Below, piece by piece: positions 594 to 39,597 of a stretch of 64,000 nt of DNA. The notes beneath the pieces were generated by a model that worked only from the letters and a program-made list of their open reading frames with translations, ran no database searches and was not told where the DNA came from. The DNA comes from Raja brachyura (taxonomy: Eukaryota). The DNA is taken from the NCBI GenBank assembly GCA_963514005.1, contig CAUPSL010000303.1:248001-312000 (forward strand), in the 5' to 3' direction. Numbering within the stretch: the stretch's first letter is position 1; each line of letters opens with the position of its first letter. A program made the translations under genes and the position numbers.

Positions 594-645
594 ATGATTT
601 TGTTCATCTTGCTGAGTTTCTTCCGTGTACAAGGGGCTCTAGTCG
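594..645 (+). CDS. MHC class I-like exon 1, signal peptide MILFILLSFFRVQGALV
   Basis: ATG at 594 starts a hydrophobic 17-aa leader, followed by the donor G|GTAAGT at 646. Phase 1 joins to GG-CCT of the alpha1 exon, giving ...GALV-GPHTL. Confidence 0.75.
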
Positions 646-1061
646 GTAAGTTAATAATTCTAATTTTATTCTCTACTGGCTAAAAGCGTCTTGACTTCAT
701 CTCAATCTGGACAGGAGGCGACCCAGGTTAAAAATGCGGGTTAGTCTGAAGTACGTGCGGACATTAAAAGGTTTAAAAGGGTCGGAAGAAAGGTCTCACC
801 CGAAACGTCGCCTATCTCCTTCGCTCCTTAGACGCTGTTACACCCGCTGAGTTTCTCCAGCTTTTTGTGTAACTCTCGATTCTCCAGCATCTGCAGTTCC
901 TTCTTTAACACAAGGGTTTAATCTCCCCTGTTTCAGTACAATCCAGACTGGAATGTGTGCTTTGATTTGCAACATGCCCCGTTTCCTTTGAGGAAGAAAG
1001 AACTGCAGATATTAGTTTAAACTGATTTTAATTCGTGTAAAACAAACAGGAGCGAGGCACT

Positions 1062-1965
1062 CACTAGGGTGGCCTCGATGCTCCGCTCTTGCTCTCCCTT
1101 CCCCCCATTCGTAACAAGGACAGAGTCCCCCTTGTCTTCACCTTTCACCCCATCAGCCGTCCCACACAACATATAACCTTCCATCATTTTTGCCACCTCC
1201 AACAGGATCCCACTACTGGCCACATCTTCCCATCTCCACCCCTGTCTGGTTTCCATGGAGACCGGTCCCTCCGAAATTCCATGGTCCTCGTCCTTTTCCA
1301 CCCAAACCACCCCTCCCCAGGCACTTTCCCCAGCACCGGCAGGAGATGCAACACATGTCCCTTTCCCTCCCCCCTCGACTCCATCCAAGGACCCAAACAG
1401 TCTTTCCAAGTGAGGCAGAGGATCACTTGCACCTCCTCCAACCTCATCTACTGTATCCACAGTTGCAGGTGGCAACCTCTCTACATCTGCGGGGCCAAGC
1501 GCAGGCTCGGCAATCATTTTGCTGAAATACTCTGCCCAGTCCATCTTAACCTACCTGATCTGGTTGCTCAGCACTTCAACCTCTCCTCCCATTCCCAATC
1601 TGACCTTTCGGTCCTGGGCCTTCTCCATTGTCAGAGTGAGGCCCAGTGCAAATTGGAGGAATAGCACCTCATATTTTGCTTGGGTTGTTTACAACCAAGC
1701 CACATGAAGATTGACTTCTCCAACTTTAAATAGCCCTTGCTTTCCCTCTCTATCCCCCCCTTCCCAGTTCTCCCACCAGTCTTATTGTCATTGCCTACAC
1801 TCTAACTTTGTCCCATCCACTCCCCTGACATCAGTCTGAAGAAGGGCCTCGACCCGATAGGTCGCCCATTCCTTCTCTCCAGAGATGCTGCCTGCCTGCT
1901 AAATGAATCCAGCATTTTGTGTCTACCTTTGAGTTAAACCAGCATCTGCAGTTCTTTTCTACACA
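1062..1965 (+). mobile_element. Penelope-like element 3' fragment (GIY-YIG endonuclease + pLTR-like tail)
   Basis: Encodes PLVFTFHP...CNTC...FQVRQRITCTSSNLIYCI...LYICGAKRRLGNHFAE, a PLE GIY-YIG domain. The tail carries a degenerate hammerhead motif at 1836-1863. Confidence 0.85.
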
Positions 1966-2069
1966 AAGTGCCTTGTTTGACAGGTTCAGGTTTATGGCCA
2001 AATGTCGGAAGAGAGCGAGGCACAAGTACAATGCAAAATCAGGAAAAGATTAGCACAGTCACTAAAGAT

Positions 2070-3590
2070 TAGCAAAGTCAAATGTGGGTCCCTCGAAGGT
2101 TGACACAGGTGAAATTAGTATGGGCAACAAGGAAATGGCAGAATAGTTGAATAGGTACTTTGGATCTGTCTTCACTAACAATCAAGACACAAACAATCTC
2201 CCAGATGTACTGGAGGACAGAGGGCCTAAGGGGGTAGAGGAATTGAAATACATTTTCATTAGGCGAGAAATAGTATTGGGCAGGCTAATGGTACTGAAGA
2301 ATGATAAATCCCCTGGGCCTGATGGTCTGCATCCCAGGGTCCTCAGGGAGGTGGCCCTGGAAATAGTGGACGCATTGGTGATCATTTTCCAATGTTCAAT
2401 AGACTCAGGATCAGCTCCTGTGGTTTGGAGGATAGCTAATGTTATCCCACTTTTCAAGAAAGGAGCGAGAGAGAAAACAGGGAATTACAGACCAGTTTCT
2501 CTGACTTCAGTGGTGGGAGAGATGCTGGAGTCAATTATTAAAGAGGTAATAATGGGGCATTTGGATAGCTGTAAAATGATTAGTCCAAGTCAACATTGAT
2601 TTATGAAATGGAATTCATGCTTTACTAATCTTCTTAAATGTTTCACACACTGTGTATTTTGCTATTAACTGAGCGACAACTCTTAGCTCCAAACTTGCGG
2701 TCACCATGTTTACGTGGTTTATTAATGATTTGGATAAGGGGATAGAATGTGTTGTGGCCAGGTTTGCAGTTGATGCTAAAATAGGTGGAGGGGCAGGCAG
2801 TGTAGAGGAAGCAAGGACTTTGCAGAAGGACTTGTTCATGTTAGCAGAGTGGGCAGAGAGGTGGCAGATGAAATTCAGAATAGCAAAGGGTGGAGTCATG
2901 CATTTTGGTAATACGAATAAAGGCGTAGATTATTTTACAAATGGAGGGAGAATCCAGAAATCTGAGGTGCACAGTGACGTGGGAGTGTTGGTGCAGGATT
3001 CCCAAAAGGTTAATTTGCAAATTGAATCGGTAGTCAGGAAGGTGATTTATATCAAGAGGACTGGAATACAAAAACAGAGATGTCATTCTGAGGCTCAAAA
3101 ACATTTGGAGTAAAGTGTGCAAATTTGGGCCCCCTATCTGAGGAAGGATGTGCTGGCTCAGAGGAGGCTGACAAGAATTATTCCATGAATGAGTGGGTTA
3201 GCATATGATGAGCGTTTGACAGCACTGGGCCTCTACTCGCTGGAGTTGAGAATGTTCAGGGGGGAACCTCATTGAAATTTACAGAATAATGAAAGGCAAA
3301 GCTAGAGTGGATGTGGAAAGGATGTTTCCACTGGTGGGTGAGTCTAGGACCAGAGGTCATAGCATCAGAATTAAAGGGTGCTCTTCTAGAAAGGAGGGAC
3401 TCATCGCCACAGAGGGTTGTGGAGGCCACGTTGGTGGATATTTTTAAGGCAGACATCGACACATTTTTGATTAGAATGGGTTATCATTGGGAGAAGGCAG
3501 GAAAATGGCATTAGGAGGCACAGATCAGCTATAATCGAATGGTGGAGTAGACTCGATGGGCCGAATGGCCTAATTCTACTCCAGTAACGT
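2070..3590 (+). mobile_element. degenerate CR1/HER1-like LINE fragment
   Basis: [22 protein letters not shown] and a degenerate FADD region, with deletions and stops. Confidence 0.85.
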
Positions 3591-5204
3591 GAACGTGTAC
3601 AGGTTGGGAGAGTGGGCAGAGAAGTGGCAGATGAAATTCAGTATAGCAAAGTGTGGAGAGATTCATTTTGGTAATAAGAATAAAGTGTAGATTATTTTAC
3701 AAATGGAGAGAGAATCCAGAAATCAGAGGAGCATAGTGACATGGGAGTGCTGGTGCAGGACTCCCAAAAGGTTAATTTGCAAATTGAACCGGTAGTCATG
3801 AAGATGATTTATATCAAGAGGACTGGAATACAAACCCAGAAAACGCCACCATGTCGCCAGATTTCTAAGAGTGTCAAAGGTCACAGGGAGATGACAGGAG
3901 AATGGTGTTGAGAGGGAACGATAGGTTAGCAATGATTAAATTGTGGAGTAAACTCGATGTGCTGAACAACCAAGTTCTGCACTTTATGAAGTGAGTCAAA
4001 GTTCAGAACATGAGGGGTGATCTTTTTATTTCTCCCCAGAATGGTGTGTCTGGAACCAAAATTCACAGTTTACAAATAAGGCTTCAGACATTCTTATGGC
4101 ACCAAAACATGGTGACAGTTGTGTATTGCCTAGGTTAGATCTGCTATATGATTTTACTGAGTTGTATACGGAACAAAACTTTTCACTGTACCTAGGTGCC
4201 TGTGACAATAAAATACTATTGAATCATTGAATTCAGTGTAGTAAAGAGATTAAATTATTTCACCCAGAGGGGAATTAGTCTTTCAAATTCTCTGTCCAAG
4301 AAGGCTGTGGGCATTCAGTCAATCAGATGCTTGAGGCAGGGTTGGAAGATGCTTGGATACAAAAAGAAATGGTTAGTTTGGAAAAATGGTGGTCTGCATG
4401 AGGATCATTATGATCTTATAGAATATCAGAGATTGGGGACAAAGGATGAATGGCACCACTTTACTTATGTTAGGTTTGTTCCCACTCCACAAGAGAGTCC
4501 AGAAGGAAAGAGAGTATAGAGTGTTCAATTGTCATATGTGCTGACTACAAATCAATGACATTCTTGTAGCAGCTGAGCAGAACTGTAAGACAATACAAAT
4601 AAATAACATACTAAAAATTCAGCAAATTGATAGTCCCAATGCGTGCAAAAAACACCTTGAATGCTTAGTCTAACCAAAGACTGTCCATAGGTCTACAGGG
4701 TCTGACTTGACACATCACCTATCCACTGTCACCAGCGATGCTGCCTGATCTGCTGAGTTACTCCAACACTTTGGCTTTATTTTGTTCATTATTCATAGTT
4801 GAGTGTACTGTAGTTCAGGGTTCAATATACGGGAAGATTTTAATGATCACATTCCAGCACACATCAAATGATCACATTCCAGCAGCACACAAAAAATGAC
4901 ATTCTCCTTTGATGGTAATAATCTAAGTTGGTGAAAGGGGAAACAGACTTAGATATAAAGAATAACATATTTAACGCAGTTCCAATGTAGGAAAATGCTT
5001 CAATGAGAATGCTTCAAGTAAGAATATTATTCTGTAACATTTTACTTCGAGCAGTATAATGACATTACATGACAATTAGCAAAATAAACATTTAAGGTGC
5101 ATCTTAAAGGAAAAATAGAGGAAGGGATATATAGAGAGCAATTCTACGACTTAGGCCTACTCTTCAGATGAAGTACTTACATTTGTGAATAATCAGGATA
5201 TTAT

Positions 5205-5420
5205 ACTGCCCGGTTCATCATGGGTACTGACCTCACCACCATTGAAGGGATCCACACGAGACGCTGTCTCAAAAAGGTAGCCAACATCATCACCCTGGCC
5301 ACACTCTCATTACCTCCTACCATGGGGAAGAAAGTACATGTGCTTGAAAACCATAGCCACCAGGTTGAAGAATAGCTTCTTCCCAACAACTATCATGCAA
5401 ATGAACACTACACAATGCTA
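5205..5420 (+). mobile_element. old Rex1/Babar- or L2-type LINE 3' fragment (related pieces at ~7110-7185 - and ~37700-38140 +)
   Basis: Translates to GTDLTTIEGIHTRRCLKKVANII..., resembling the C-terminus of these LINEs. Confidence 0.5.
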
Positions 5421-7188
5421 ACCTCAACTGTGAAATTCTATGGACTGTCTTTGGTTGCACTAAGGACTTTCAGATTTTGTTTGCCCTAGTAGTGAGGTTA
5501 GTAATTTATTGATTTTGTTAGTTGTATTATGTATTTTCTATGTTTATTGTCTGTACAGACCTGTTATCATGCTCTGAGTAAAAATCTCATTGTTCCGTTT
5601 CTCGTTGTGTATATGTGTGTATGTGTGTATATATAATTTGGTGCAGGGGGAAGATATATATATATATGATAATTAAGCACTCAACTCTTGATTAAAACTG
5701 GAAGATGGTTTGCAATGTTGAGGAACAATGACGAGGGAAGAGCTGCGTAGGGAGGAACTGCAGATGCTGGTTTAAACCGAAGATAGACTCAAACAGCTGG
5801 AGTAACTCAGCGGGTCAGACAGCGACGCTGGAGAAAAGGAATAGGTGGCATTTCAGCTCGAGACCTTCTCTCCAGAGATGCTGCGTGTCCCACTGAGTTA
5901 CTCCAGCATTTTGTGTCAATCTCTAAGTGCTGGAGTAACTCAGCTGGTCAGGCAGCATCTCCAGCAAACATGGATAGATGACGTTTAGGATCAACACCCT
6001 TCCACTGGGTGAAGAAGGGGTCTTGACCCGAAACATCTATCCATCATCACATATCCATGTTCTCCAGGGATGCTGCCTTACCCACTAAGATGATCCAGCA
6101 CTTTACGCATCTATCTTTGTGAACCAACATTTGTAGTTCCTTGTTTCTAGTGTAAATTGACTTTCATTTGTAGGTAAGTAATATGATCTGGAGAGATATG
6201 ATGGGAATTTGCAGAGAATAAGAATGGGTTGGTCGAGAGCAAGAGTTTAATTGTCATCTGTACTGGCAATTGGACAATGAAATTCGCATGCACATATTGA
6301 ATATAAGATAATCAATGACACAATAAATTAATATTAGTTATACTAGGTAACCAAACCATAACAGTGGAAAAACAAAACTTCCTTACTGCAAGCAAAATAA
6401 AGTCCATCACAGATCAGAGTTGTTGAGGTAAGGTTGTGGTTAGTGTTGTGCAGTGTTTAAAAGCCTGTTGCTCGTCAGAAAAAAGCTGCTCTTAAACCTG
6501 GAGCTAACAGTTCTCAGGCTCTCTAACCTCAAAGGTAGTTCATTGTTTCAATGGTATTTTATTTGTGGCATGTACCAAGATACAGTGAAATTTATTTTTG
6601 TATACAGTTTAATACAGGTATCACTATATATATATATAAGCCCTTAGATATATCTTAGATAAGCATCTCAGATGCAGTACGTGTCGCCAGTTATTTGTGC
6701 CATTTTCACATCCCAGTTGTTGTAAGTGAGGGTTCTTGGCCTGACCATGAGCCCCACTGTCCTGGTGTTGTTCCAGGGTCGGCCTGGCCAAGCGAAGCTG
6801 TGGTGTCCTCTACTGCTGCAGGGAGTAACTGGTCCATGCGCCCGGCCTCTTGGAGCGGCGCCTGGAACAGCCAAGCCCCAGGCTGCTGTAGGGCCTCCAG
6901 CGCCCACTCCACTGTTGAGGCAGTGCATTCCCTCATGCAGCCAGTCTGTCTATCAGCCATCCATCTGACTCCTTCCACTCTGGGCCGACGAGTTGAGCCT
7001 TCCAGATGGTTCCTCCATCCTTGGTCCACAGCGACCAAGAACTCGGTCCATGATGGATGGGCCCGATGTTCCGGGCGAATTCCCGGTCCAGGGTGGCCGG
7101 CCCTGAGAGTATGGCCAGGGTGGTGTGGGTCTCTGATGACATTAGCTGTCTTTCTGAGGCAGCACCTCCTGTAGATCCATTCAATGAT

Positions 7189-7885: not shown

Positions 7886-9297
7886 ATGTCAGTGGAGATT
7901 GGTCCCGTGGTTTGCTCAGCCTGCAACATGTGGGAGATCAGGGATATGGTCGGTGTCCCTGATGACTACATTTGCAGGAAGTGTGTCCAGCTGCAGCACC
8001 TGGCAGACCGCATTGAACGATTGGAGCTGCGGCTGGATTCATAGAAACATAGAAACATAGAAAATAGGTGCAGGAGTAGGCCATTCGGCCCTTCGAGCCT
8101 GCACCGCCATTCAATGTGATCATGGCTGATCATCCAACTCAGTATCCCGTACCTGCCTTCTCTCCATACCCCCTGATCCCTTTAGCCACAAGTGCCACAT
8201 CTAACGCCCTCTTAAATATAGCCAATGAACTGGCCTCAACTACCTTCTGTGGCAGAGAATTCCAGAGACTCACCACTCTCTGTGTAAAGAATGTTTTCCT
8301 CATTTCGGTCCTAAAGGAATTCCCCCTTATCCTTAGACTGTGACCCCTTGTTCTGGACTCCCCCAACATCGGGAACAATCTTCCAGCATCTAGCTTGTCC
8401 AACCTCTTAAGAATTTTGTAGGTTTCTATAAGATCCCCCCTCAATCTTCTAAATTCCATCGAGTACAAACCGAGTCTATCCAATCTTTCCTCATATGAAA
8501 GTCCTGACTGGAGCATCCACGATGCAGAGAAAGTCGTGGACAGCACATACAGCGAGTTGGTCACGCCACAGGTAAAAGGTAAGAGGACAGAAAGGGAGCG
8601 GGTGGCCAATAGCCAGCAAAACAGCAGGCAGGTAGTGCAGGAGTCCCCTGCGGTCATCTCCCTAGTCAACAGGTTTACCATTTTGGATACTGTTGAGGGA
8701 GATGGCTCATCAGGGGAATGCAGCAGCAGCCAAGTTCATGGCACCATGGGTGGCTCTGCAGCACATGATGGGGGAAAAAAGAGGGGAAGGGCTATTGTAA
8801 TAGGGGATTCAATTGTCAGGGGAATAGATAGGCGTTTCTGCGGCCGCAAAAGAGACTCCAGGATGGTATGTTGCCTCCCTGGTGCAAAGGTCAGGGATGT
8901 TACTGAACGGCTGCAGAACATTCTGGAGGGGGAGGGTGAACAGCCAGTTGTCGTGGTGCATATTGGCACCAACGATATAGGGAAAAAAAGGGATGAGGTC
9001 CTACAAGGTGAATTTAGGGAGCTAGGAGATAAACTCAAAAGTAGGACCTCAAAGGTAATAATCTCTGGATTATTACCAGTACCACGGGCCAGTCAGAGTA
9101 GAAATAGGAGGATATTGCAGATGAATACGTGGCTTGAAAAATGGTGCAAGGGGGAGGGATTCAAATTTTTAGGGCACTGGGACCATTTCTGGGGGAGGTG
9201 GGACCAGTACAAACAGGACGGTCTGCACCTGGGCTGGAATGGAACCAATGTCCTTGGGGGAGTGTTTGCTAGTGCTGTCGGGGAGGATTTAAACTAA
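7886..9297 (+). pseudogene. CR1 ORF1 (zinc finger/leucine zipper + SGNH esterase), interrupted by an insertion at 8040-8508
   Basis: MSVEIGPVVCSACNMWE...YICRKCVQLQHLADRIERLELRLDS (7886-8041) resumes as WSIHDAEKVVDSTYS at 8509. Esterase motifs GDSIVRG, HIGTND and DGLH are present. Confidence 0.9.
8040..8508 (-). mobile_element. 5'-truncated CR1 3' end inserted antisense in ORF1 of the host CR1
   Basis: Reverse complement of the CR1 ORF2 C-terminus (SGLSYEERLDRLGLYS...GEKAGTGY), 3' UTR and octamer tail. Confidence 0.95.
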
Positions 9298-12212
9298 TGT
9301 GGCAGGGGGATGGGTACAAGAGCAGAGAGGCAGGTGGGTGTAAAACGAGGGTGGAAGCAATAGGGAGCAAGGTGAAAAGTAAAAGGGGTAAGAGCATTGT
9401 AAAAACAAGCCTGAAGGCCTTGTGTCTCAATGCAAGGAGTATTCGTAATAAGGTGGATGAGTTGAACGTGCAGATAGCTATTAATGAGTATGATATAGTT
9501 GGGATCACGGAGACATGGCTCCAGGGTGACCAAGGCTGGGAGCTGAACATCCAGGGGTATTCAATACTCAGGAGGGATAGAGAGAAAGGAAAAGGAGGTG
9601 GGGTAGCGTTGCTGGTTAGAGAGGAGATTAACGCAATGGAAAGGAAGGACATTAGCTTGGAGCATGTGGAATCCGTATGGGTAGAGCTGCGAAACACTAA
9701 GGGGCAGAAAACGCTAGTGGGAGTTGTGTACAGGCCACCTAACAGTAGTAGTGAAGTTGGGGATGGTATAAAACAGGAAATTAGAAATGCGTGCGACAAA
9801 GGCAAAACAGTTATAATGGGTGACTTCAATCTACATATAGATTGGGTGAATCAAATTGGCAGGGGCGCTGAGGAAGAGGATTTTTTGGAAAGTATGAGGG
9901 ATAGTTATCTAAATCAACATGTAGAGGAACCAACGAGAGAGCAGGCTATTTTAGACTGGGTATTGAGTAATGAGGAAGGGTTAGTTAGCAGTCTTATTGT
10001 GCGTGCCCCCTTGGGCAAGAGTGACCATAATATGGTCGAGTTCTTCATTAGGATGGAGAGTGACATTGTTAATTCAGAAACAATGGTTCTGAACTTAAGG
10101 AAAGGTAACTTTGAGGGTATGAGACGTGAATTGGCCAAGATTGACTGGCAATCAATTCTAAAAGGGTTGACGGTGGATACGCAATGGAAGACATTTAAAG
10201 ACTGCATGGATGAACTACAAAAATTGTTCATCCCAATTTGGCAAAAGAATAGATCAGGGAAGGTAGTGAATCCGTGGATAACAAGGGAAATCAGGGATAG
10301 TATCAAAGCAAAGGATGATGCGTACAAAGTAGCCAGAAAAAGCAGCATACCAGAGGACTGGGAAAAATTCAGAGACCAGCAGAGAAGGACAAAGGGCTTG
10401 ATTAGGAAAGGAAAAATAGATTATGAAAGAAAACTGGCAGGGAACATAAAAACTGACTGCAAAAGTTTTTATAGATATGTGAAGAGAAAGAGATTAGTTA
10501 AAACAAATGTAGGTCCCTTGCAGTCAGAAACAGGTGAGTTGATCATGGGGAACAAGGATATGGCGGACCAATTGAATAACTACTTTGTATCCGTCTTCAC
10601 TAAGGAAGACATAAATAATCTGCCGGAAATAGCAGGGGACCGCAGGTCAAAGGAGTACTTGAGTGAAATCCAGGTTAGTCGGGAAGTGGTGTTGGGTAAA
10701 TTGCATGGATTAAAGGCCGATAAATCCCCAGGGCCAGATAGGCTGCATCCCAGAGTACTTAAGGAAGTAGCTCCGGAAATAGTGGATGCATTAGTGATAA
10801 TCTTTCAAAACTCTTTAGATTCTGGAGTAGTTCCTGAGGATTGGCGGGTAGCAAACGCAACCCCTCTTTTTAAGAAGGGGGGGAGAGAGAAAACGGGGAA
10901 TTACAGACCAGTTAGTCTAACATCGGTAGTGGGGAAACTGCTAGAGTCAGTTATTAAAGATGGGATAGCAGCACATTTGGAAAGTGGTGAAATCATTGGA
11001 CAAAGCCAGCATGGATTTACGAAAGGTAAATCATGTCTGACGAATCTTGTGGAATTTTTCGAGGATGTAACTAGTAGCGTGGATGGGGGAGAACCAGTGG
11101 ATGTGGTGTATCTGGACTTCCAGAAGGCTTTCGACAAGGTCCCACATAAGCGATTAGTATATAAACTTAAAGCATATGGCATTGGGGGTTCAGTATTGAT
11201 GTGGATAGAGAACTGGCTGGCAAACAGGAAGCAAAGAGTAGGAGTTAACGGGTCGTTTTCACAATGGCAGGCAGTGACTAGTGGGGTACCGCAAGGCTCA
11301 GTGCTGGGACCCCAGCTATTTACAATATACATAAATGATCTGGATGAGGGAATTGAAGGCAATATCTCCAAGTTTGCGGATGACACTAAGCTGGGGGGCA
11401 GTGTTGGCTGTTAGAAGGATGCTAGGAGAATGCAAGGTGACTTGGATAGGCTGGGTGAGTGGGCAAATGTTTGGCAGATGCAGTATAATGTGGATAAATG
11501 TGAGGTTATCCACTTTGGTGGCAAAAATAGGAAAACCGACTACTATCTAAATGGTGGCCGATTAGGAAAAGGGGAGATGCAGCGCGACCTGGGTGTCATG
11601 GTACACCAGTCATTGAAAGTAGGCATGCAGGTACAACAGGCAGTGAAGAAAGCCAATGGTATGTTAGCTTTCATAGCAAAAGGATTTGAGTATAGGAGCA
11701 GGGAGGTTCTACTTCAGTTGTATAGGGTCTTGGTGAGGCCACACCTGGAGTATTGCGTACAGTTCTGGTCTCCAAATCTGAGGAAGGACATTATTGCCAT
11801 AGAGGGAGTACAGCGAAGGTTCACCAGACTGATTCCTGGGATGTCAGGACTGTCTTATGAACAAAGACTGCATAGACTCGGTTTATACTCTCTAGAATTT
11901 AGGAGATTGAGAGGGGATCTTATAGAAACTTACAAGATTCTTAAGGGGTTGGACAGGCTAGATGCAGGAAGATTGTTCCCGATGTTGGGGACGTCCAGGA
12001 CAAGGGGTCACAGCTTAAGGATAAGGGGGAAATCCTTTAGGACCGAGATGAGAAGGAATTTTTTCACACAGAGAGTGGTGGGTCTCTGGAATTCTCTGCC
12101 ACAGAGGGTAGTTGAGGCCAGTTCATTGGATATATTTAAGAGGGAGTTAGATGTGGCCCTTGTGGCTAAGGGGATCAGAGGGTATGGAGAGAAGGCAGGT
12201 ACGGGATACTGA
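9297..12212 (+). pseudogene. CR1 ORF2 (APE endonuclease + reverse transcriptase), one in-frame TAG at 11412-11414
   Basis: Motifs [34 protein letters not shown] and FADD. ORFs 9297-11414 and 11430-12212 share a frame, and the second CR1 copy has GAG at the TAG position. Confidence 0.95.
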
Positions 12213-24336: not shown

Positions 24337-24597
24337 GGCCTCACACACTGATCTATTACTACACCCTGAACCACGGGAATACTAATCTACCAGAATATAG
24401 TGTGGTGGGTGTTCCGGACGGTTGTGAGATACAGTATCATGACAAAAACATGGCCATTACAGTTCCAAGACAGAAATGGATGGCGGCTGCATTTGACAGG
24501 AGTTACTGGGTAAGAAATACGGTTTTCACAACTGGTTTCCATGGAATCATCAAAGGGGAAGTCGCCGAATGGATGCGGAGGCATAGCAAAACAACAG
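24337..24597 (+). CDS. MHC class I-like alpha1 exon (261 bp)
   Basis: Acceptor ttttatttgtgtctag, donor GTTAGT. Encodes GPHTLIYYYTLNHGNTNLPEYSVVGVPDGCEIQYHD...PRQKWM...SYWVRNT...WMRRHSKTT, matching alpha1 motifs (HxLxY, LPEY, VG..DG, PRxxWM, YW). Confidence 0.92.
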
Positions 24598-30435: not shown

Positions 30436-33400
30436 TAGTCAGCAACTTTGGTCAGCAGACATTTTAAGTTTCAACCCAGTTCGCCTGACCTCCATTTTCC
30501 CTTCACAGAACCATTTTACAGTGTTGATTCAAGATTTACATTCACATTCTCACCGTGATCTGTGTGGGTTTTCCCCGCTATCTTCAGTTTCCACACACGC
30601 TCCAAAGGCGTACAGGTTTGTAGGTTAGTTGGCTCGGTATAAATGTAAATAGTCCCCAGTGCGTGTAGGATATTGTTAATGTGTTGGGATCACTGGTTGG
30701 TGCAGACTCCGTGGGCTGAAGGGCCTGTTTCTGCACTGTATCTCTAAACTAAACTAAATCAAACTTGCACTAAGGAGGTTCCCAAAGAGTTCAGCCATCC
30801 AATAACTCAGCCTAATAAGGTGGAACGAGGAACTGCTTGGTCTACTGAAAATGTATAGAGGTTTGGAGAGAGTTGCCATAATCACTGATGGAAACATTTC
30901 AGCGCACAATACTAATGACAACAGGGTAGCGTGGTGGCACAGCGGTGGAGCTGCTGCTTCACAGCTCCAGAAACCTGGGTTCGATCCTGACTCCGGGTGC
31001 TGTCAGTACGGAGCTTGTACATTTTCCCTGTGAATGTGAGGGTTTTCTCTGGGTGCTCCATTTTCCTCCAACACTCCAAAGACACACATGTTTGTAGGTT
31101 AATTGGCTTCGGTAAAAATTGTAGATTGTACCTCGTATGTAGGATTGTGCTGATGTACAGAGATTGCTGGTCAATGTGGGTACAGTGGGCTGAAGGGCCT
31201 GTTTTCATGCTTTATCTCTAACCTATACGAAATAATTGTCAATGTAACAAATATGAGCTTATTTCACACCTGGGGCATAGATCCAGGGTTTCTTTCCTTT
31301 CATCTTAATTCCAGGTTCTCTGATAGGAAGAGCCATCCATAAGATAGGATCAGGTTGGGATTCTGCAGTGGTGTTTCTGCCACAGGCATAATTCTTCCAA
31401 CTTTTGTAAACATATTGCTGCCTCAAAGTGCCATAGACCAAGGTACAAGCCTGCTGTCTGTATGGAGGTTGTACTTTTCCCCCGTGACCGCATGAGGTTT
31501 CTCAGAGATCTTGGTTTCCTCCCACACTTGAAAGACATACGGGTTTGTAGGCTAATTGGCTTTATATAAATATAAATTGTCCCTAGTGTGTGTGGGATAA
31601 TGTTAATGTGCGGGTATCACTGGTCAGTGCGGACTGGCTGGGCTGAAGTGCCTGTTTCCATGCTTCCATTGTCCATGTCATGCTCCTCGTCCTTCCATTT
31701 TCCTCTTTGGGAAGCGGGAGCAAAGTAGAAGGGGTAACACAGCTCCCTCTCACTATGTGGAGATGCTACCAGACCCTTGGTCCGGTACCCGGACGTGGCA
31801 CTGACGGACGAGAAGCTGAAGCAAAGACGTCGAAGCCAAAGAACCAAATAGAAATGAGGCCGAAACGCCAATAAACCGAATGAAGACGAAGACGAAACCC
31901 CTACTAACCGAAAGGATGGGACGCCTAAACACAAAGTAACCAAAAGGGTGGGACGCCTAAAAGCCAACGAGCCGAAAAGCTGCATCGCCAAAAGCAAACT
32001 TACCGAATGGCTGCTCTGTCGAAACACCACCTATCCGAAAGTCGGCATCACCTCCAAGCTAAAGGACCGACTACCGCTCAACAGATCAGTCCAATAACGG
32101 TCTTGACGTTGCCCGGGGCGGGACTTGTCAGCGATTGGTCCAGACCCCCGCGTCCATCACATCACTGTGAACGGATGAACATTGTCCCACATCTCGGCTC
32201 CATCCGACCCGCAGCCCGCAGAGGGTGGTCGTGGGAGAGTGGGGGCTGAACCGAGGGGTGCGCACCTTCGGCCGCTTTCAACTTGGTGCTTGGGTTCGGA
32301 TTACCCAGTCACCTATGGCTTGTGTGGGGAAAATGAACCCCACGCTCCCGTCTCCCCTCTTCTCTCTCTCCCCCTTCTCTCTCCCCCCTCTGTCTTCCCC
32401 CTCTCTCTCACCTGGTCTTGGATCAAAAACTTGTACTGAAGTCCCCACATTCTGTCCACACCTTGTTAATCTGTTGCTGCCACGTTTTTATTTCACTATT
32501 GGCCATGACCCGAGTATACCCGGGGGTGGCACTGAACAGATTAATCAGGAACAGTTTCCTAGGAAACGGCAAGCAGATGGACCTAAAGATCGTAGCCTGT
32601 GTATTATCCAGAGATGATGCCTGACCTGCTGAGTTACCCCAACACTTTGTGTCTTTCTTAATTTTAGGAAGGAACTGCGGATGCTGATTGAAACCGAAGA
32701 TTAACACAAAAAGCTGGAGTCACTCAGTGGGTCAGGCAGCAAGTCTGGAGAAAGGGAATAGATGATGTTTCTGGTTGAGACCTCCTTCACACCTGCCACC
32801 AAAATGTCACATTCCTTTTCACCTGAGATGCTGAGTGACTCCAGCTTCTGGTGTCTATCTTGTGTCCTTCTTAAATTGTGTTGACTTCATGCATGTGGCA
32901 ATCAGGTGGTTTATATTATTGGCGGAAAATCCCATTGAAAGTAGGAAGTATTCTGCATTATAAGCACAGGTGGAATGGATATGCACATGTTACAATGTCC
33001 TGGTACATTGTCCTGTTACCGTGACTCCCATGACTTATGTATGAGTTATTTAATCACCAGTTCCAGTGTGAGGAAGGATGAGAATGGCAAAGGAATGGAA
33101 GCTTGCATAACCAAAAAGGTGATAAACTTAACTAGAAAGAAAGAAAAAGAAAGTGCATGTAAGGATCAGGAGGATGGAATCAGGCAGGAGCTATGAGGAA
33201 TGTAAAGAAAGGAGGGAATAACTCGAGTGGGTGAGTAGAGGGTGGCACAGTGGCACAGCTGGAGAGTTGCTGCCTTGCAGCACCTGCAGCGTTGGAGACC
33301 CGCCTTTGATCCTGACTACGGGTGCTGCCTGTAAGGAGCTTGTACGCTCTCCCCATGACTACGTGGGTTTTCTCCGAGATCTTCGGTTTCCTCCCACACT

Positions 33401-33789
33401 CTAAAGACGTACAGGTATGTAGGTAAATCGGCTTAGAATAAATGTAAATTGTCCCTAGTGTGGGCTGAAGGGCCTGTTTCTGCGCTGTATCTCTAAAGCT
33501 TAAAACTAAAGGGGCCCATAGAGGCCACAAAGTGGCTTTGGTGAGTCGGATTACAGAAAATCCCACATCTTTTTCAAGGTTTCAAGGTCAGTTTATTGTC
33601 ACATGTACCAATTAAGGTTCAATGAAATTCAGATTACGATATAGTCACACTTAAAAAAAAAGCAAAGGCCGCCAACACCTCGATGTTAGGCCCCAGTGTG
33701 GCCGGAGATACGATACCAAAAAAAAATCGCTTCTACATCGAGGTAAGAGATTAGAAAAAGTTTCCTCCATCTCCCAACCCCCACACTAA

Positions 33790-34111
33790 TGGGCCTGTCC
33801 CACTTAGGCGATTTTTCAGGCAACTGCAGGTGACTAGTTTATTTCCACATGCTCGCCGGTGGTCGTCGGGGGTAGTCTCAGTCACGGAAAACGTTGTAGT
33901 GTCTTTCTGCTCACCACTAAATTTTGAACGTTGAAAATTTTACAGTGACAGTGGGTTTGACTTCATTGAGCAGAGCTTAACTTCTCCTGACATAGGTGCT
34001 GTCGTAGGTTGTCGCCAGGATGACGTAGGTTGTTACTGGTTTTTCGTTGACCTGCTACAACTATGACAGTTGCCGGCAGTTGCCTAAAAAATCACCAGTC
34101 GGACAGGCCCA
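33790..34111. mobile_element. Harbinger-type MITE
   Basis: TIRs TGGGCCTGTCCCACT / AGTCGGACAGGCCCA plus subterminal inverted sequence; flanks TAA/TGA. Confidence 0.75.
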
Positions 34112-34348
34112 TGAAGAACATACATTCAATACATACAAAACCGACACAAAGAAGGAAGGGACAGGCAGAGTTTTGGCGAGGCAGCCATTGCACCAAAACA
34201 CGAGGGAGAAGGTGGGATTGCTTAAAGATGTAGCAGCGAATATGTGCTTGGTGTTTGTGGACGGAGGCGAGGTACGAAACAAATACTTTGCATTTGGTTT
34301 CACCAAGAAAGACATGGAGAAAAGTAAGGACTTTTAATAGTAAGTACA

Positions 34349-35143
34349 GCATGTAATCCTCCAACATTTTCACCACCTGCAACAGGATCCGACTACTGGC
34401 CACATCTTCCCATCTCCACCACTTTCTGCTTTCCGCAGAGATCGTTCCCTCCGAAACTCCCTGGTCAACTCGTCCCTTCGCACCCGAACGACCCACTCCC
34501 CCGATACTTTCTCCTGCATCCGCAGGAAATGCAACACCCGTTCCTTTACCTCCCCCCTCGACTACATCCATGAACCCAAAGTCTTTCCAGGTGAGGCAGA
34601 GGTTCACTTGCTCCTCCCCCAACCTCATCTACTGTATCTGCTGTTTCAGTTGTCAACTTCTCTACATCAGCGAGACCAAGCGCAGGCTCGGCGAACGTTT
34701 TGCTGAACACCTCCGCTCAGTCCGTCTTATCCTACCTGATCTCCCAGTGGCTCAGCACTTCAACTCCCCCTCCCATTCCCAATCTGACCTTTCTGTCCTG
34801 GGCCTCCTCGATTGTCAGAGTGAGGCCCAGCACAAATTGGAGGAACAGCACCTCGTATTTCGCTTGGGCAGTCTGCACTTCAGCGTTATGAACATTGACT
34901 TCTATAACTTTCGATAGCCCTCCATTTATCTCTCCATCCCCTCCCCCTTTGCAATTCTCCCACCAGTCTTACTGTCACCGCCTACATTCTATCTTTGTCC
35001 CTCCCCTGACATCAGTCTGAAGAAGGGTCTCGACCCAAAATAACGCCCATTCCTTCTCTCCAGAGAAGCTGCCTGACCTGCTGAGTTACTTCAGCATTTA
35101 GTGTCTACCTTCGATTTTAACATCTGCAGTTCTTTCTTACACA
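34349..35143 (+). mobile_element. Penelope-like element 3' fragment (second copy)
   Basis: Encodes FQVRQRFTCSSPNLIYCICC...LYISETKRRLGERFAEH; colinear with 1170-1965. Confidence 0.87.
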
Positions 35144-35261
35144 TGGAGAATCAATGTGGAGAATGTTAACATGCAGGGGCACTTTGAAGTTAAGTAAGAA
35201 GGAGATGTTGGGTCACTTGAAGAGAAATGTGGATAAATCCCCAGGATAGAGCGGTGTAGTG

Positions 35262-35725
35262 GATGATAATAATAATAATACTAATCGTTGATAACATTAG
35301 TGCCATGCTGGTTTCTGACGGGCACGATGACAGACACAACACACATCTCTGTCCTCCATTCAGCTGGCAAGCTGCTCTTTTGTCTCTGCAGATGGGTCTT
35401 CCATAAACATCTTCAGCATCGTCTTGATTGGTCGTCCCGGGTCGAGTCTTCCATGGGTTGGTTCCCACAGCACAACTTTGTTTGCTGGCATTTCTGGGTG
35501 GCGGTGGCAGTGACCTGCGAGCCTCATCCTTCTCAACGTGATCTTCTCGGCCAGAGGTGGAGTCTCCCCATGGAGCTGAGCATTGGTGATGTGGTTTTGA
35601 ACTATTCTGAGCATTCGGGTGTAGGTACCATCGAGAGACTTGGACAGTGCTGGAGTGAGAGTCCATGCCTCACACCCGTACAATAGTATGGTCTCTACAG
35701 TTGCACGGAAGGCCAAATATTCAGG
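35262..35725 (-). mobile_element. RTE-clade LINE 3' fragment
   Basis: Encodes FRATVETILLYGCEAWTLT...RRMRLAGHCHRH...GRP, an RTE C-terminal signature, with an (ATT)n tail. Confidence 0.8.
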
Positions 35726-35855
35726 GTGTAGTTCAGTGACAAGTAGAGTTCTGCAAGGGTCTGTGCTGTGACCCTTGCTACTTGTGACATTTATAAATGA
35801 CTTGGACCCTGGTGTCATAACAATTAATCAAATAATGATTTTGTCTTTCTTTCAG

Positions 35856-36131
35856 ATTATCACTATATTCAAGGACAGTTTGGTTGTGAGGTGAACGATC
35901 ACAGTCCCAATGGAGGGATATTGAAGTTGGCTTATGATGGAAGATATGCATTTAGTTTTGATAAGAACACACTAAAGTGGACAGTGCATGATCCAGCAGC
36001 TGAGCCCTTCAAAGAGAAATGGGACAAGAATGTAAAAATGAACCGTTATTTCAAGAGCTTGTTAGAAAATGACTGTGTGGAACGATGACATACATACTAT
36101 GCAATTGGAAAGACATACCTGACCAGGGAAG
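35856..36131 (+). CDS. MHC class I-like alpha2 exon (276 bp) with in-frame TGA at 36086-36088
   Basis: Acceptor ttgtctttctttcag, donor GTGAGT. Encodes DYHYIQGQFGCEV...AYDGRYAFSFDKNTLKW...KEKWD...LENDCVER*HTYYAIGKTYLTRE. Both disulfide cysteines and AYDG are present. Confidence 0.93.
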
Positions 36132-36449
36132 GTGAGTTCAGAACAAAGGATGTTGTTTTTTGATGGTGGGCGATGAGTAATATTTCACTCTGAGGCAATG
36201 AGTAATATTATCTCTGACCCAATCATGACAGAGGGAAAGGTAATTCGGCCCATTTAGTCTATGCTAGTTTTCAATGCAATGTCGACTAACTGCTCAACAG
36301 CTCTCTCTCACAACTTGCACTCAGCTCCCTCGGATTCTCCATTCATTCAGCTCCACTTCAGATAATTTGCAATGTCCAACTAACTTACCGGCACGTCCTT
36401 GGTACATGGGACAAAACTGGAGCACATGGAGGAAGCCAACTGATGCATA

Positions 36450-36925
36450 AGGTCATAAGTGATGGGTGCAGCATTAGAACATTCGGCCCATCAAGTCTAC
36501 TCCGCCATTCAATCATGGCTGATCTATCTCTCCCTCCTAACCCCATTCTCCTGCCTTCTCCCCATAACCCCTAGCATGCATAATAATCAAGAATCCATCT
36601 ATGCCTTAAAAAATATCCATTGACGGATTCCAAAGCCTTCTGTGGCAAATAATTCTACAGAATCACCACCCTCTGACAAAATAAATTCCACCTCATCTCT
36701 TTCCTAAAGGAATGTCCTTTAATATTGAGACAATGACCTCTAGTCGTAGACTCTCCCACCAGTGGAGACATTCTCTCCACATCCACTCTATCCAACCCTT
36801 TCACTGTTTGATATGATTCAATGAGGTCCCCCCTTATTCTTCTAAATTCCAGCGAGTACAGGTTCTCTGCCATCAAATGCTCATCATATGTTAACCCATT
36901 CATTCCTGGGTTCATTCTTGTACAC
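36450..36925 (-). mobile_element. CR1 3' fragment in MHC intron 3
   Basis: Encodes LYSLEFRRIRGDLIE...TRGH and a CR1 3' UTR. Confidence 0.8.
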
Positions 36926-37084
36926 CTCTTTTAAACCACGTGGTTGGTTGATGGTGACGAAAGAGGTAAAATGGGGCAGATGTGGACAGTAACTTGGTTG
37001 TTGTAGTAGACTGAAGAATATTTTGTGGTGGGTGACTGTGCAAGTTTTACTGAAGGTGAAAATAACCAACTTACTGTCTTGTAG

Positions 37085-37351
37085 TTTCCCCTGAAGTCAC
37101 TCTCACTGCCCGCCCTGATGATCATTCAGTCCTGTACTGCACTGTGTTTGGATTTTATCCACCGGCCATCAATGTCAGCTGGTTGCAGAATGGTCAACAT
37201 GTCTCTGAGACCAAATCTTCTGAGGTCATACCCAACAACGATGGAACATATCATCTAAAGTCTGTCCTTGAGTATGATCCGTATGATGGGAAACAGTATT
37301 CCTGTCATGTCGATCACAGCAGCCTGCCCGGTGGGAAGACCATCATCTGGG
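37085..37351 (+). CDS. MHC class I-like alpha3 exon (Ig C1-set, 267 bp)
   Basis: Acceptor tactgtcttgtag, donor GTAAGA. Encodes VSPEVTL...LYCTVFGFYPPAINVSW...PNNDGTY...YSCHVDHSSL...W, a C1-set signature. Confidence 0.95.
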
Positions 37352-39489
37352 GTAAGAACATTAAATATTCTTTCATGGATCATCATTATCTTCTGTTGTT
37401 TCCATTTTAATCATTATGACTACATCACATATTCCAAGATGCTTAAACTTTCTTTGTTTAGTGGTGTTGCTCTAAGTAATCACGTAATCAGCACCCACTC
37501 TCCACTTGAGCAGAAGACTTTGTCAACAGAAAATTTATCAAAATAAATAAATAACTAATATACAAGGAAGGAGTATTTGGGTTTCTCAGTGGTGGAACTG
37601 AAATCCCAGAAATGTATGTTTAAATAAAAAATGAATCTTTCCTCATGATGTGATTAACAGCAAGGCACTGGGGGAGTACATGCCCCAATCCAAATCAATG
37701 GTCCGAAGTGGAAATGATTGAGAGCTTCATGTTCCTTGGCATGAATATATACAATATTCTGTCATGGACTGACCACATAGCCAAGGAGGCACACCGACAC
37801 CTCTACTTCCTCAGGAGACTGAGAACATTCATAATGTCTCTGGCGACTCTAGCAAACATCTATAGATGCCGCTAGAGAAAGCATGTTGTTGGGTTGCATC
37901 ACATCTTGATTTGGGAACTGCACTGTATAAGACAGCAAGAATATACAAAGAGTTAAAGATCGTCACACAAGCCACTATTGAGTCAATCTACACCAGGTTG
38001 CCTTGGTCCACCCTGGTCATTCCTCCTTCCTGCTCCCATCACACAATTGGTACATGAAGTTGAAAATATGCACTGCCAGGCTCGGGAACACCCCCTTTCC
38101 ATCTGTTATCAGGCTTCGGAAGGGTCCTTCCATAATGTAGGTTTAATGCCCGATTCACCTCAACCTCATTGCACATTGAACATTGTCTATGGAACGGATG
38201 CGTTACAATGCTGAGAACTATATTCTGTACTCTGTATCCTGCTCTTTGCTCTATCTATTATTTTGTATTTGTATTTATGTATAGTCTTATCTAATTTCTT
38301 TGGATAGCATACAAACAACACCTTTTCACTGTGTCTTGAAACATCTGGCATTAATAAAACTAAACCTAATGAAGCAAGTTCCGTGACGCAAGTTACAGCT
38401 TCTGCAACGAACAATATAACTGCCTGACAAACAGTGATCATACCAGATTGATTCAATGTATGCTGCACTAACCTACACAAATGCTCACTTTTGAAGATTC
38501 CCTCGAACAATGCACAACTAAGCAATCTGATGTTTCACTCTGAAGACTGTTGACATACTCCAAAACTTAATTTCCAACCTATCTATGTATCATCAGCAAT
38601 CTAGGCTACAGCACCATCAGTCCCTTCATCTGCTCTTAATGCCAACGATAAGTAGTTCACTTTCTTGCATTGATTCCCAACTTGCAGATGCAGTTTCCCA
38701 ACCTGAACACTCCTTTAAGACAACTCTCTGCTTGCTCTTAATTGTTTTTCCATTCATGCTAATTATTACCCCCAGTGTCATAAGCCATGTGCCTTTGCAT
38801 CAATTGATCAGATATCTTATGAAAATCCAGATATTCTGGCGACATCTGGTGGTCGGGCCATTTATTGCTAGAACCCTCGTCAGGGCAGCTGGGTCTACCA
38901 CGTGACAGAGTTTTCGTGGGAGTTGGTGATGAGTTCATCGCCAGTTAACTGGTGTGCCTGATTGCAACGGCAGGAACTTTGCTCGTTCTTAAAAAACACA
39001 CATGTGTGCAAAAACTGTATTTCTTTAAAAAACATTGATTTGTTCACGTTTGGATCTCTACAATATCTTGTATTTCTTTTGTTTCTCATTCCAATGTTGT
39101 TACCTATTCTGCTATTCCATCATTTTGTTTTAGAATTTTAGGCTGTGCACACCTGCAAACTACTGCTGCTCGAATATGCGTTGTCTACGGGTTCCTGTTG
39201 CATTTTCAAAGACTTCTAATCAATTTCTCAAACAAAGTTTGAAGAAGGGTCCCAAAACGAAACGTCCCCTGTCCATGTGTAAGGAGCAACTGCAAATGCT
39301 GGTTTACACTGAAGATGGACACAAATTGCTGGATTTACTCAGCTGGTCAGGCAGCATCTCTGGAGAAAAGGAATAGGTGGCATTTCGGGTCGAGACCCTT
39401 CTTCATCCTGAAGTCCTCAGACAGTGCCAATCTATTTAGCTGCACAGCTTAACAATTGATTTGTAAAATTATGCATTCTTATTTTTCAG

Positions 39490-39597
39490 AAGGAAATAGG
39501 AGGAAAGACAGGCACATCGGCCTTATTGCCGTGTGTGTGCTGATATTGCTGGCTATTGTCTTGGCAGTAATTGTTTGGTGGAGAAAAAAGAGGAGAG
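39490..39597 (+). CDS. MHC class I-like connecting peptide/transmembrane exon (108 bp)
   Basis: Acceptor ttcttatttttcag, donor GTAAGA. Encodes EGNRRKDRH-IGLIAVCVLILLAIVLAVIVWW-RKKRR, a TM helix with a basic stop-transfer signal, phase 1 at both ends. Confidence 0.9.

What the first reader, a model, noticed from the sequence alone, without database searches (positions are those of the whole stretch)
594..39597. Hidden 39-kb non-classical MHC class I gene with a partly remodelled peptide groove
Five exons reconstruct a complete leader-a1-a2-a3-TM heavy chain across TE-filled introns of 23.7, 11.3, 0.95 and 2.1 kb. By eye against HLA numbering, Y7, Y59, K146, W147, Y171 and the C101-C164 pair are kept. 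T143 is F, Y159 is L and W167 is R. The N86 sequon is lost (RRHSKT instead of RxNQS/T), alpha1 has an extra Cys (DGCE), and the only extracellular sequon is NVS in alpha3. This pattern argues against a classical peptide presenter. It suggests a divergent chondrichthyan lineage (UBA/UCA/UDA/UEA or an unnamed one) with a different ligand. I cannot assign the lineage without a tree.
Basis: partly seen in the sequence, partly recalled or inferred. Interest (0 to 1): 0.8.

Follow-up and report, generated by a model that had tools for sequence, protein, structure and literature searches.

The report
Skate UGA gene with premature stop
This is a skate copy of UGA, an already described shark-and-ray MHC class I-like gene said to bind lipids, spread over 44 kb of repeats and carrying a stop codon that close relatives lack, so it is a useful annotation and not a new kind of gene.

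Summary
The five exons are real, on the + strand, with canonical splice sites. Three points change the picture.

1. There is a sixth exon, the cytoplasmic tail at 44134-44174. The gene therefore runs 573/594-44174 and is colinear with 334-aa relatives.
2. The alpha2 exon has an in-frame TGA at 36086-36088.
3. The gene is not an unnamed lineage. Each domain matches PDB 9ch4 far better than any other solved chain (E 8e-33, 1e-29, 5e-34). The 9ch4 entry is titled 'shark nonclassical MHC class I, UGA'. Per-domain trees place the window inside the skate subclade of 17 UGA sequences from other species.

Most of the 'remodelled groove' features are shared across the lineage. This includes the extra Cys in DGCE.

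These features separate this copy from its relatives:
- the stop codon;
- loss of the alpha1 glycosylation site, which is present in 16 of 16 relatives;
- Asp in place of the tail Tyr of a YxxI/V motif, present in 12 of 16 relatives;
- L-to-P and G-to-E changes at two otherwise invariant positions.

Contigs of four other coded organisms were laid on 35700-39700 only. They are about 98-99% identical there and read TGG and Gly at the stop and G-to-E sites. The alpha1 and tail changes could not be checked in them.

Most likely this is a recently disabled UGA copy or a null allele. No RNA data were available. The scan had already noted a UGA gene on another piece of this genome (s1-881416).

The parts
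573..645 (+). Exon 1: leader. ATG at 594 (MILFILLSFFRVQGALV) with an in-frame upstream ATG at 573 (MREVVREM). GT donor at 646.
   Evidence: The NCBI models of Leucoraja and Amblyraja start with MREVVREM / MREAVREM. tblastn with P0001 covers 573-674.
24337..24597 (+). Exon 2: alpha1 domain, phase 1 at both ends. Holds the lineage-typical DGCE Cys. Pro replaces an invariant Leu (VGVPDGCE). The sequon is lost (RRHSKT where relatives have N-x-T/S).
   Evidence: (9ch4_A E 7.8e-33).
35856..36131 (+). Exon 3: alpha2 domain, with the Cys pair spaced 63 residues apart.
   Evidence: MHC_I 1.9e-13; 9ch4_A E 1.1e-29.
36086..36088 (+). In-frame TGA, codon 77 of exon 3, near the end of the alpha2 helix. It is part of a cluster of three window-private substitutions at 36082, 36084 and 36088. 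The window reads GAA CGA TGA (E R stop). Contigs of four other runs read GAT CTA TGG (D L W).
   Evidence: table 3: other_depth equals all_depth in X1, X3, X6 and X11, one contig each.. Trp is at this column in 13 of 16 relatives.
37085..37351 (+). Exon 4: alpha3, an Ig C1-set domain with an NVS sequon. Glu replaces a lineage-invariant Gly at codon 46 (37222-37224). The four runs read Gly.
   Evidence: C1-set 1.3e-20; 9ch4_A 5e-34; 37223 A>G in all four runs.
39490..39597 (+). Exon 5: connecting peptide, transmembrane helix and basic stop-transfer (…WWRKKRR).
   Evidence: 83-94% identical to the skate relatives that cover it; P0157 lacks this part.
44134..44174 (+). The Tyr of the relatives' DYQNI / DYQTI motif is Asp here. 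AATAAA lies at 44207 and 44226.
8536..12212 (+). Near full-length LINE inside intron 1. ORF1 has a GDSL-esterase domain. ORF2 has endonuclease and reverse transcriptase domains. A further ORF follows.
36370..36905 (.). Very high-copy repeat in intron 3. A second one lies at 39184-39451 in intron 4.
   Evidence: table 2: summed contig depth is 10^5-10^6 here against 10-300 in the exons.

Best explanation
The window holds a six-exon copy of UGA in a skate. UGA is a non-classical MHC class I lineage found across sharks and rays.

From its relatives, the intact product is a 334-aa type I membrane protein. It has a leader, an alpha1/alpha2 groove platform, a beta2-microglobulin-type Ig alpha3 domain, a TM helix and a short tail. 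The tail carries a YxxI/V motif. By analogy with CD1b-d, this would route the molecule through endosomes (inferred). A review says the lineage binds lipids like CD1d; I did not test this here.

In this assembly the copy is most likely dead or a null allele. A TGA in the alpha2 exon ends the frame before alpha3 and the TM. It lies four exon junctions upstream of the last exon, so the mRNA should also be a target of nonsense-mediated decay (inferred).

The copy has further changes at sites that its relatives keep. The alpha1 glycosylation site is lost, and so is the tail tyrosine. Pro replaces an invariant Leu in an alpha1 floor strand, and Glu replaces an invariant Gly in alpha3.

The damage looks recent. 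Splice sites, frame and length are intact. Overall protein divergence is ordinary. Very close relatives still read Trp at the stop position.
For: Lineage:
- Alpha1, the alpha2 piece and alpha3 each hit 9ch4_A best: E 7.8e-33, 1.1e-29 and 5e-34. The next hits are 2.3e-10, 5.7e-14 and 8e-29.
- 9ch4 is titled 'Crystal structure of shark nonclassical MHC CLASS I, UGA'.
- The skate relative P0164 aligns to 9ch4_A without a gap over 266 residues, E 6.5e-120.
- Relatives are annotated in 3 skates, sawfish, 2 stingrays/mantas and 7 sharks.
- Per-exon identity to skates is 76-84% (a1), 87-88% (a2) and 91-92% (a3). To sharks it is 51-60%, 64-74% and 54-65%.
- In trees with 9 outgroup class I sequences, the window sits in the skate UGA clade for a1 (100/99) and a3 (99/99). 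For a2 it sits in the batoid UGA clade (96/90).

Inactivation:
- TGA at 36086-36088.
- The window violates 3 of 72 lineage-invariant columns: L44P, N101S and G243E. Other skates violate 0-1.
- The tail Tyr is Asp. The YxxI/V motif is in 12 of 16 relatives.

Recent and private:
- In all four runs laid, the only contig over the site reads TGG. All four also read Gly at 37223.
- Of 7 listed exon 3-4 differences that separate the window from all four runs, 6 change the protein and 1 is silent. The 8 listed differences among the runs split 4:4.
- For X1, the exons differ from the window at about 1.4-1.7% (9-11 of 651 nt). The introns differ at about 1.0% (14 of about 1370 nt, tables 3 and 8).

Exon structure:
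- Logan contigs of 1.4-3.5 kb encode the whole 334-aa protein in one frame (P0160-P0162). That is what a spliced mRNA of the relative would give.
Against: - There is only one stop. There is no frameshift, all ten splice sites are canonical, and the CDS length equals that of the relatives.
- Three invariant-column violations lie within the range of intact relatives taken overall (0-11).
- The relative-rate counts are not significant. For a1, window versus Amblyraja gives 7:5. The best case anywhere is p=0.04, uncorrected.
- Root-to-tip lengths are ordinary. For a1 the window is 0.15, against 0.05-0.20 for the other skates.
- The invariant Gly replaced by Glu aligns, by my recalled HLA numbering, with a Glu of classical class I. 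It need not be harmful.
- The stop could be an assembly error. I could not lay the source individual's own reads: the best holder has only 0.61 of the sampled words.
- The table of differences is cut (152 rows not shown), so the 6:1 count may be incomplete.
- Only 35700-39700 was laid. I do not know whether the alpha1 and tail changes are private.
- No RNA run was on record.
- Lipid binding rests on a review's 'personal communication' and a PDB title, not on anything tested here.
Confidence: 0.65

Rival explanations
1. The gene is a working UGA gene. The TGA would then be an assembly or consensus error, or a rare variant of the sequenced individual with no consequence for the species.
For: - Four of four other runs read TGG.
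- All splice sites, the frame and the length are intact.
- Alpha3 is 91-92% identical to other skates.
- Three substitutions within 7 nt (36082, 36084, 36088) is an odd pattern for independent point mutations.
Against: - The window also carries private or unusual changes elsewhere: Gly to Glu at 37223, the lost sequon, the lost tail Tyr, and Leu to Pro. One local error would not explain these.
- Substitution errors are not the usual failure of modern long-read assemblies (general knowledge, not tested).
- The window differs from the four runs at many other sites too, so it is a real, distinct haplotype or species.
Confidence: 0.2
2. It is an old, decaying pseudogene paralogue of UGA that has drifted for a long time beside an intact copy. 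That intact copy would be the UGA gene noted on another piece of this genome.
For: - UGA is multicopy in at least one skate. Ten distinct proteins at 90% identity or more are annotated on one 41.5-Mb Rhinoraja longicauda chromosome.
- Alpha1 is only 76-84% identical to other skates.
- In the a1 tree the window branches outside the other three skates, with weak support (90/61).
Against: - No frameshifts or splice-site losses.
- Relative-rate counts are balanced.
- Root-to-tip length is like that of the other skates.
- In the a3 tree the window is sister to Amblyraja plus Leucoraja, as a species tree would give (88/65, weak).
- The neighbouring GPCR is as diverged from Leucoraja and Rhinoraja (89% and 87%) as the class I gene is. 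This fits plain species divergence.
- Close relatives keep the frame open at the stop site.
Confidence: 0.1
3. One reading: a new or unassigned chondrichthyan class I lineage whose remodelled groove takes a different ligand.
For: - It is not classical. The shark classical chain 6lup scores only E 2.3e-10 with alpha1.
- Several anchor positions are replaced.
Against: - It nests within UGA.
- The groove substitutions that are not private are shared with 16 relatives.
Confidence: 0.03

Closest known systems
UGA, elasmobranch non-classical MHC class I lineage (PDB 9ch4, released 2026-03-18). NCBI models include XP_078272153 (Rhinoraja longicauda), XP_032898133 (Amblyraja radiata) and XP_055521885 (Leucoraja erinacea).
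   Same: - Same six-part architecture, and the same 334-codon length as the Rhinoraja model and the Logan-derived sequences P0160-P0162 (the Amblyraja and Leucoraja NCBI models are 341 aa because they start at the upstream ATG).
- DGCE cysteine, Cys pairs in alpha2 and alpha3, and the NVS site in alpha3.
- Leader and tail wording.
- 76-92% identity per domain to skates. About 60% identity to the solved shark chain.
   Different: - In-frame TGA in alpha2.
- N-x-T sequon at the end of alpha1 lost.
- Tail Tyr is Asp.
- L-to-P and G-to-E at invariant columns.
- Introns swollen to 44 kb in total.
CD1 (lipid-presenting class I-like molecules of tetrapods)
   Same: - A review says UGA and UFA bind lipids comparable to those of human CD1d (PMC12562908, section 2.1, personal communication).
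- The family's YxxI/V tail resembles the endosomal sorting motif of CD1b-d (recalled).
- Chicken CD1-1 aligns to the skate UGA model with Z 15.2, against 16.6 for 9ch4. That model is poor.
   Different: - No special sequence kinship. With alpha1 and the alpha2 piece no chain named CD1 is among the 60 best shown. Classical class I, MR1 and ZAG rank next after 9ch4.
- Orthology to CD1 is called hard to assess by the authors themselves (PMC10751288, section 11, said of UFA).
Classical shark class I (UAA; PDB 6lup; Triakis scyllium alleles P0041)
   Same: Same fold and exon plan. By my recalled numbering, Y7, Y59, K146, W147 and Y171 are kept.
   Different: - Only about 30-35% identity.
- It falls among the outgroup sequences, apart from the UGA group, in the a1 and a3 trees and is unresolved among the outgroups in a2.
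- Positions 143, 159 and 167 are replaced.

Membership tests
UGA lineage | Closer in sequence to the solved UGA chain than to any other class I chain, in each extracellular domain | tested here: met
   9ch4_A is the top hit for a1, the a2 piece and a3: E 7.8e-33, 1.1e-29 and 5e-34. The next hits are 2.3e-10, 5.7e-14 and 8e-29. The entry title names UGA.
UGA lineage | Falls inside the clade of UGA relatives in trees that include other class I lineages | tested here: met
   Per-domain trees had 17 UGA sequences, 9 outgroups and the window. The window is in the skate UGA clade for a1 (100/99) and a3 (99/99), and in the batoid UGA clade for a2 (96/90).
UGA lineage | Family hallmark residues: Cys in DGCE, and Cys pairs in alpha2 and alpha3 | tested here: met
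   The Cys is present in 15 of 16 relatives and in the window. C115/C178 and C215/C270 (P0164 numbering) are invariant and present.
UGA lineage | N-glycosylation sequon at the end of alpha1 | tested here: not met
   N-x-T/S is in 16 of 16 relatives. The window has S-K-T.
UGA lineage | Short cytoplasmic tail with a YxxI/V motif | tested here: not met
   The motif is in 12 of 16 relatives. The window reads D-Q-N-I.
UGA lineage | Open reading frame through all exons | tested here: not met
   TGA at 36086-36088. Four other runs read TGG.
UGA lineage | Linkage to the MHC class Ib cluster | tested here: inconclusive
   No MHC framework gene lies in the window.
UGA lineage | Binds lipids (CD1-like function) | not testable with these tools
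   Only stated in a review as a personal communication (PMC12562908, passages).
Classical class I (UAA) | Sequence kinship with classical shark class I, and a full set of peptide-terminus anchors | tested here: not met
   6lup_A scores E 2.3e-10 with a1 and 3.2e-07 with a2. It falls among the outgroup sequences, apart from the UGA group. Positions 143, 159 and 167 are replaced (mapping by recalled numbering).
CD1 | Sequence kinship of alpha1/alpha2 with CD1 | tested here: not met
   No chain named CD1 is among the 60 best shown for a1 or the a2 piece. Only alpha3 matches CD1 fusion chains, as any C1-set domain would.

The most novel reading that the evidence does not exclude
In skates the CD1-like UGA lineage is a birth-and-death multigene family, not a single conserved gene. 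At least ten copies lie on one Rhinoraja chromosome, and at least two loci are reported in this genome. On this reading, this locus is a member caught at the moment of loss. It would be a null allele or a very young pseudogene that still segregates against intact TGG versions in close relatives. That would give a natural knockout for asking what a shark-type lipid presenter is needed for.
Probability: 0.3. Interest if true: 0.5.

Novelty: new member of a known kind. Interest (0 to 1): 0.3.

Why it matters
It fixes the annotation. A gene that automatic pipelines would miss or call a pseudogene is assigned to UGA, with all six exons placed.

It also separates what is typical of the lineage from what is private damage in this copy. 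For people who study the origin of lipid presentation, two by-products are of some use.
- UGA is multicopy in at least one skate. A review calls it single- or low-copy.
- The YxxI/V tail is widely conserved.

The stop codon itself is of local interest only, unless it proves to be a segregating null allele.

Tried and rejected
- **Long-term relaxed constraint.** At first I read the long terminal branches of the window (a1 0.15 against 0.03) as acceleration. Summing root-to-tip lengths and counting unique changes against sawfish and manta outgroups showed no significant excess. I dropped that claim.
- **Structure-based mapping of the groove.** The AlphaFold model of the skate relative P0164, built on a 16-row alignment, was poor (mean pLDDT 60.8, alpha1 under 50). 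I used it only to retrieve PDB entry titles. No groove analysis rests on it, and the second job was not spent.
- **Transcript evidence.** None of the 22 runs listed was on record as RNA. None of the 15 joints listed lies at an exon border, and all sit in repeats (536 joints not shown). The join 645 to 24337 is therefore untested in this species. It is supported only by relatives' cDNA-like contigs.
- **Synteny with TAP, PSMB8 or BRD2.** A word search of earlier notes found nothing on brd2, psmb8, rxrb or col11a2.
- **Second class I gene in the window.** None was found.
- **Rfam at gathering threshold.** No match.
- **Literature.** Six searches found no primary paper on UGA or UFA and none citing 9CH4. 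Only PMC12562908 and PMC10751288 name the lineages, and I read passages of both by 'find'. All other papers were seen as search listings only. The supplementary tables of PMC10751288 may list class Ib gene positions that bear on linkage.
- I did not search, fold or align the spliced six-exon model as one protein. I worked exon by exon and used the natural relatives P0154 and P0164 as full-length proxies.

Full report
**Observation**

- Leader: 594-645
- Alpha1: 24337-24597
- Alpha2: 35856-36131
- Alpha3: 37085-37351
- TM: 39490-39597

All junctions are phase 1. Pfam recognises the alpha2 piece as MHC_I (1.9e-13) and alpha3 as C1-set (1.3e-20). Alpha1 and the TM exon have no Pfam hit.

Two things were missing from the finding.
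- The alpha2 exon contains an in-frame TGA at 36086-36088 (…CVER*HTYYAIGKTYLTRE). The same reader filed it as a separate note (s1-880885).
- A sixth exon at 44134-44174 encodes the tail (D)DQNIQPNQNVHC and the stop codon. AATAAA lies at 44207 and 44226.

The six exons add up to 1005 nt, which is 334 codons plus stop. An in-frame ATG at 573 (MREVVREM) matches the start chosen in the NCBI models of two other skates. Each exon occurs once in the window.

The introns are full of repeats.
- Intron 1 holds a LINE with an esterase ORF1 and an endonuclease/RT ORF2 at 8536-11414.
- Contig depth reaches 10^5-10^6 at 36370-36905 and 39184-39451.

**What it is**

I searched exon by exon. Alpha1, the alpha2 piece before the stop and alpha3 each hit one solved chain far better than any other: 9ch4_A, at E 7.8e-33, 1.1e-29 and 5e-34. 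The next best hits are 2.3e-10 (shark classical 6lup), 5.7e-14 and 8e-29. Fold searches gave the entry's title: 'Crystal structure of shark nonclassical MHC CLASS I, UGA', released 2026-03-18. I ran those searches with a poor model of a skate relative, used only to obtain titles.

A scan of 1.84 billion representatives with alpha1 found 155 proteins at E up to 0.001 but only one above 60% identity. That one is P0001, at 76%. It is an NCBI model from Leucoraja erinacea. Members of its cluster include the Amblyraja radiata model P0154.

Searching with P0154 gave 17 proteins at E up to 1e-10. They come from 2 skate species, sawfish, stingray, manta and 7 sharks.

Per-exon identity of the window:

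| Compared with | Alpha1 | Alpha2 | Alpha3 |
|---|---|---|---|
| Rhinoraja | 84% | 88% | 91% |
| Amblyraja | 78% | 87% | 92% |
| Leucoraja | 76% | 87% | 91% |
| Sharks | 51-60% | 64-74% | 54-65% |

The skate relative P0164 aligns to 9ch4_A over 266 residues without a gap (E 6.5e-120).

Per-domain trees used 17 UGA sequences, 9 other class I sequences and the window. The outgroups included Triakis classical class I and a second Leucoraja class Ib. The trees place the window in the skate UGA clade for alpha1 (100/99) and alpha3 (99/99). For alpha2 they place it in the batoid UGA clade (96/90).

**Lineage traits and private traits**

An alignment of 16 relatives shows which features belong to the family.
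- The 'extra' Cys of DGCE is in 15 of 16.
- A hydrophobic residue stands where classical molecules have T143.
- The alpha3 NVS/NVT site is shared.
- The short tail carries YxxI/V in 12 of 16.

These features separate the window from its relatives:
- the stop, where 13 of 16 relatives have Trp and the solved shark chain has Leu;
- Ser for the Asn of the alpha1 sequon, present in 16 of 16;
- Asp for the tail Tyr;
- Pro for an invariant Leu in VGVLDGCE;
- Glu for an invariant Gly in alpha3.

In a formal count the window breaks 3 of 72 invariant columns. The other skates break 0-1. The whole set ranges from 0 to 11, the highest being two extra sawfish copies.

**Reads**

No run on record is RNA. 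The best holder shares only 0.61 of the sampled words. I laid contigs of four runs from four coded organisms on 35700-39700.

In every run the single contig that covers the stop reads T, T and G at 36082, 36084 and 36088. That turns GAA CGA TGA (E R stop) into GAT CTA TGG (D L W), the wording of the Leucoraja variant P0157/P0161. All four runs also read G at 37223, which restores the invariant Gly.

In exons 3 and 4, the listed differences that set the window apart from all four runs number 7. Six change the protein (G19V, A47V, E75D, R76L and stop77W in alpha2; E46G in alpha3) and one is silent. The 8 listed differences among the runs are 4 replacement and 4 silent.

For run X1 the exons differ from the window at about 1.4-1.7%, against about 1.0% in the introns (tables 3 and 8). 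The table of differences was truncated (152 rows not shown), so these counts are a minimum. All four runs also carry 18 extra bases after 39603, just beyond the exon 5 donor.

**Old pseudogene or recent loss**

I first took the long terminal branch of the window as a sign of long relaxation. That does not hold.
- Root-to-tip lengths in alpha1 are 0.15 for the window, 0.05 for Rhinoraja, 0.13 for Amblyraja and 0.20 for Leucoraja.
- Counts of changes unique to the window or to another skate, judged against sawfish or manta, are balanced. Alpha1 against Amblyraja gives 7:5 and against Leucoraja 7:7. The best case is 8:1 in alpha2, p 0.04 uncorrected.
- The intronless GPR139-like gene 10.6 kb downstream, on the other strand, is 89% identical to a Leucoraja protein and 87% to a Rhinoraja protein. 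It has no identical entry in the protein collection.

The window therefore comes from a third skate lineage whose proteins are not in that collection. The class I gene has diverged about as much as its neighbour. With all splice sites and the frame intact, the simplest reading is a UGA copy that worked until recently.

**How it would work**

What is shown:
- the domain plan;
- the kinship to a solved UGA chain;
- the conserved Cys pairs;
- the position of the stop.

What is inferred:
- The intact protein pairs with beta2-microglobulin through alpha3.
- It cycles through endosomes by its YxxI/V tail, as CD1b-d do (recalled knowledge).
- It presents lipids. A 2025 review states that UFA and UGA bind lipids comparable to those of human CD1d, on crystal and mass-spectrometry data cited as a personal communication (PMC12562908, section 2.1, passages). 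The 2023 genome paper mentions only UFA as CD1-like, unpublished (PMC10751288, section 11, passages).
- In this assembly the TGA would end the chain within alpha2 and expose the mRNA to nonsense-mediated decay. The lost glycan site and the lost tail Tyr would further impair a read-through product.

**Copy number**

The Rhinoraja cluster holds 10 distinct UGA proteins at 90% identity or more, on one 41.5-Mb chromosome. Nine keep the DYQTI tail; the tenth (P0180) ends before it. All that include that part of alpha1 keep the NET sequon. An earlier follow-up reports a UGA gene with an intact YQNI tail on another piece of this genome (s1-881416; I did not see that locus). Loss of one copy is therefore plausible. 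The review's 'single- or low-copy' description does not fit all skates.

**Limits**

- The spliced model was never searched or folded as one piece.
- Named reference sequences of UBA, UDA, UEA and UFA were not available.
- The HLA-numbered residue calls rest on recalled numbering.
- The primary description of UGA is not in the searchable library.
- Supplements were closed and I did not ask for them.

**Verdict**

The interpretation as a novel lineage is not supported. This is a new member of a known kind, probably freshly disabled. Interest is modest.

Noticed in passing
window 54740-55849 (-): An intact intronless 7TM receptor ORF (Pfam 7tm_1, 8e-21) of the GPR139-like family. It is 87% identical to a Rhinoraja protein and 89% to a Leucoraja protein. 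NCBI even fuses the two in Leucoraja (LOC129716032 isoforms). This suggests a conserved UGA and GPR139-like neighbourhood.
   Followed up: partly
Rhinoraja longicauda proteins P0164, P0178-P0186: Ten distinct UGA proteins at 90% identity or more on one 41.5-Mb chromosome. The review calls UGA single- or low-copy.
   Followed up: partly
window 8536-12212 (+): A near full-length LINE in intron 1, in the gene's orientation. ORF1 has a GDSL-esterase/OSK-like domain. ORF2 has endonuclease and RT domains (705 aa). A further 260-aa ORF has no Pfam hit.
   Followed up: partly
window 60360-63975 (-): An LTR-retrotransposon pol in two long ORFs (488 and 731 aa): RT, RNase H, integrase zinc finger and integrase core. 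Another RT fragment lies at 51928-52944 (+).
   Followed up: no
window 39603/39604: All four related runs carry 18 extra bases just beyond the exon 5 donor. The window therefore has an 18-nt deletion there relative to them. The donor GTAAGA itself is intact (table 4).
   Followed up: no
window 36082-36088: Three window-private substitutions fall within 7 nt, one of which makes the stop. A cluster like this could come from a single complex event or a short conversion tract. No donor was sought.
   Followed up: no
window 36370-36905 and 39184-39451: Extremely abundant repeats: summed contig depth is 10^5-10^6 in all four runs. Many joints link the two places, in both orientations, so they are copies of one element family (tables 2 and 5).
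   Followed up: no
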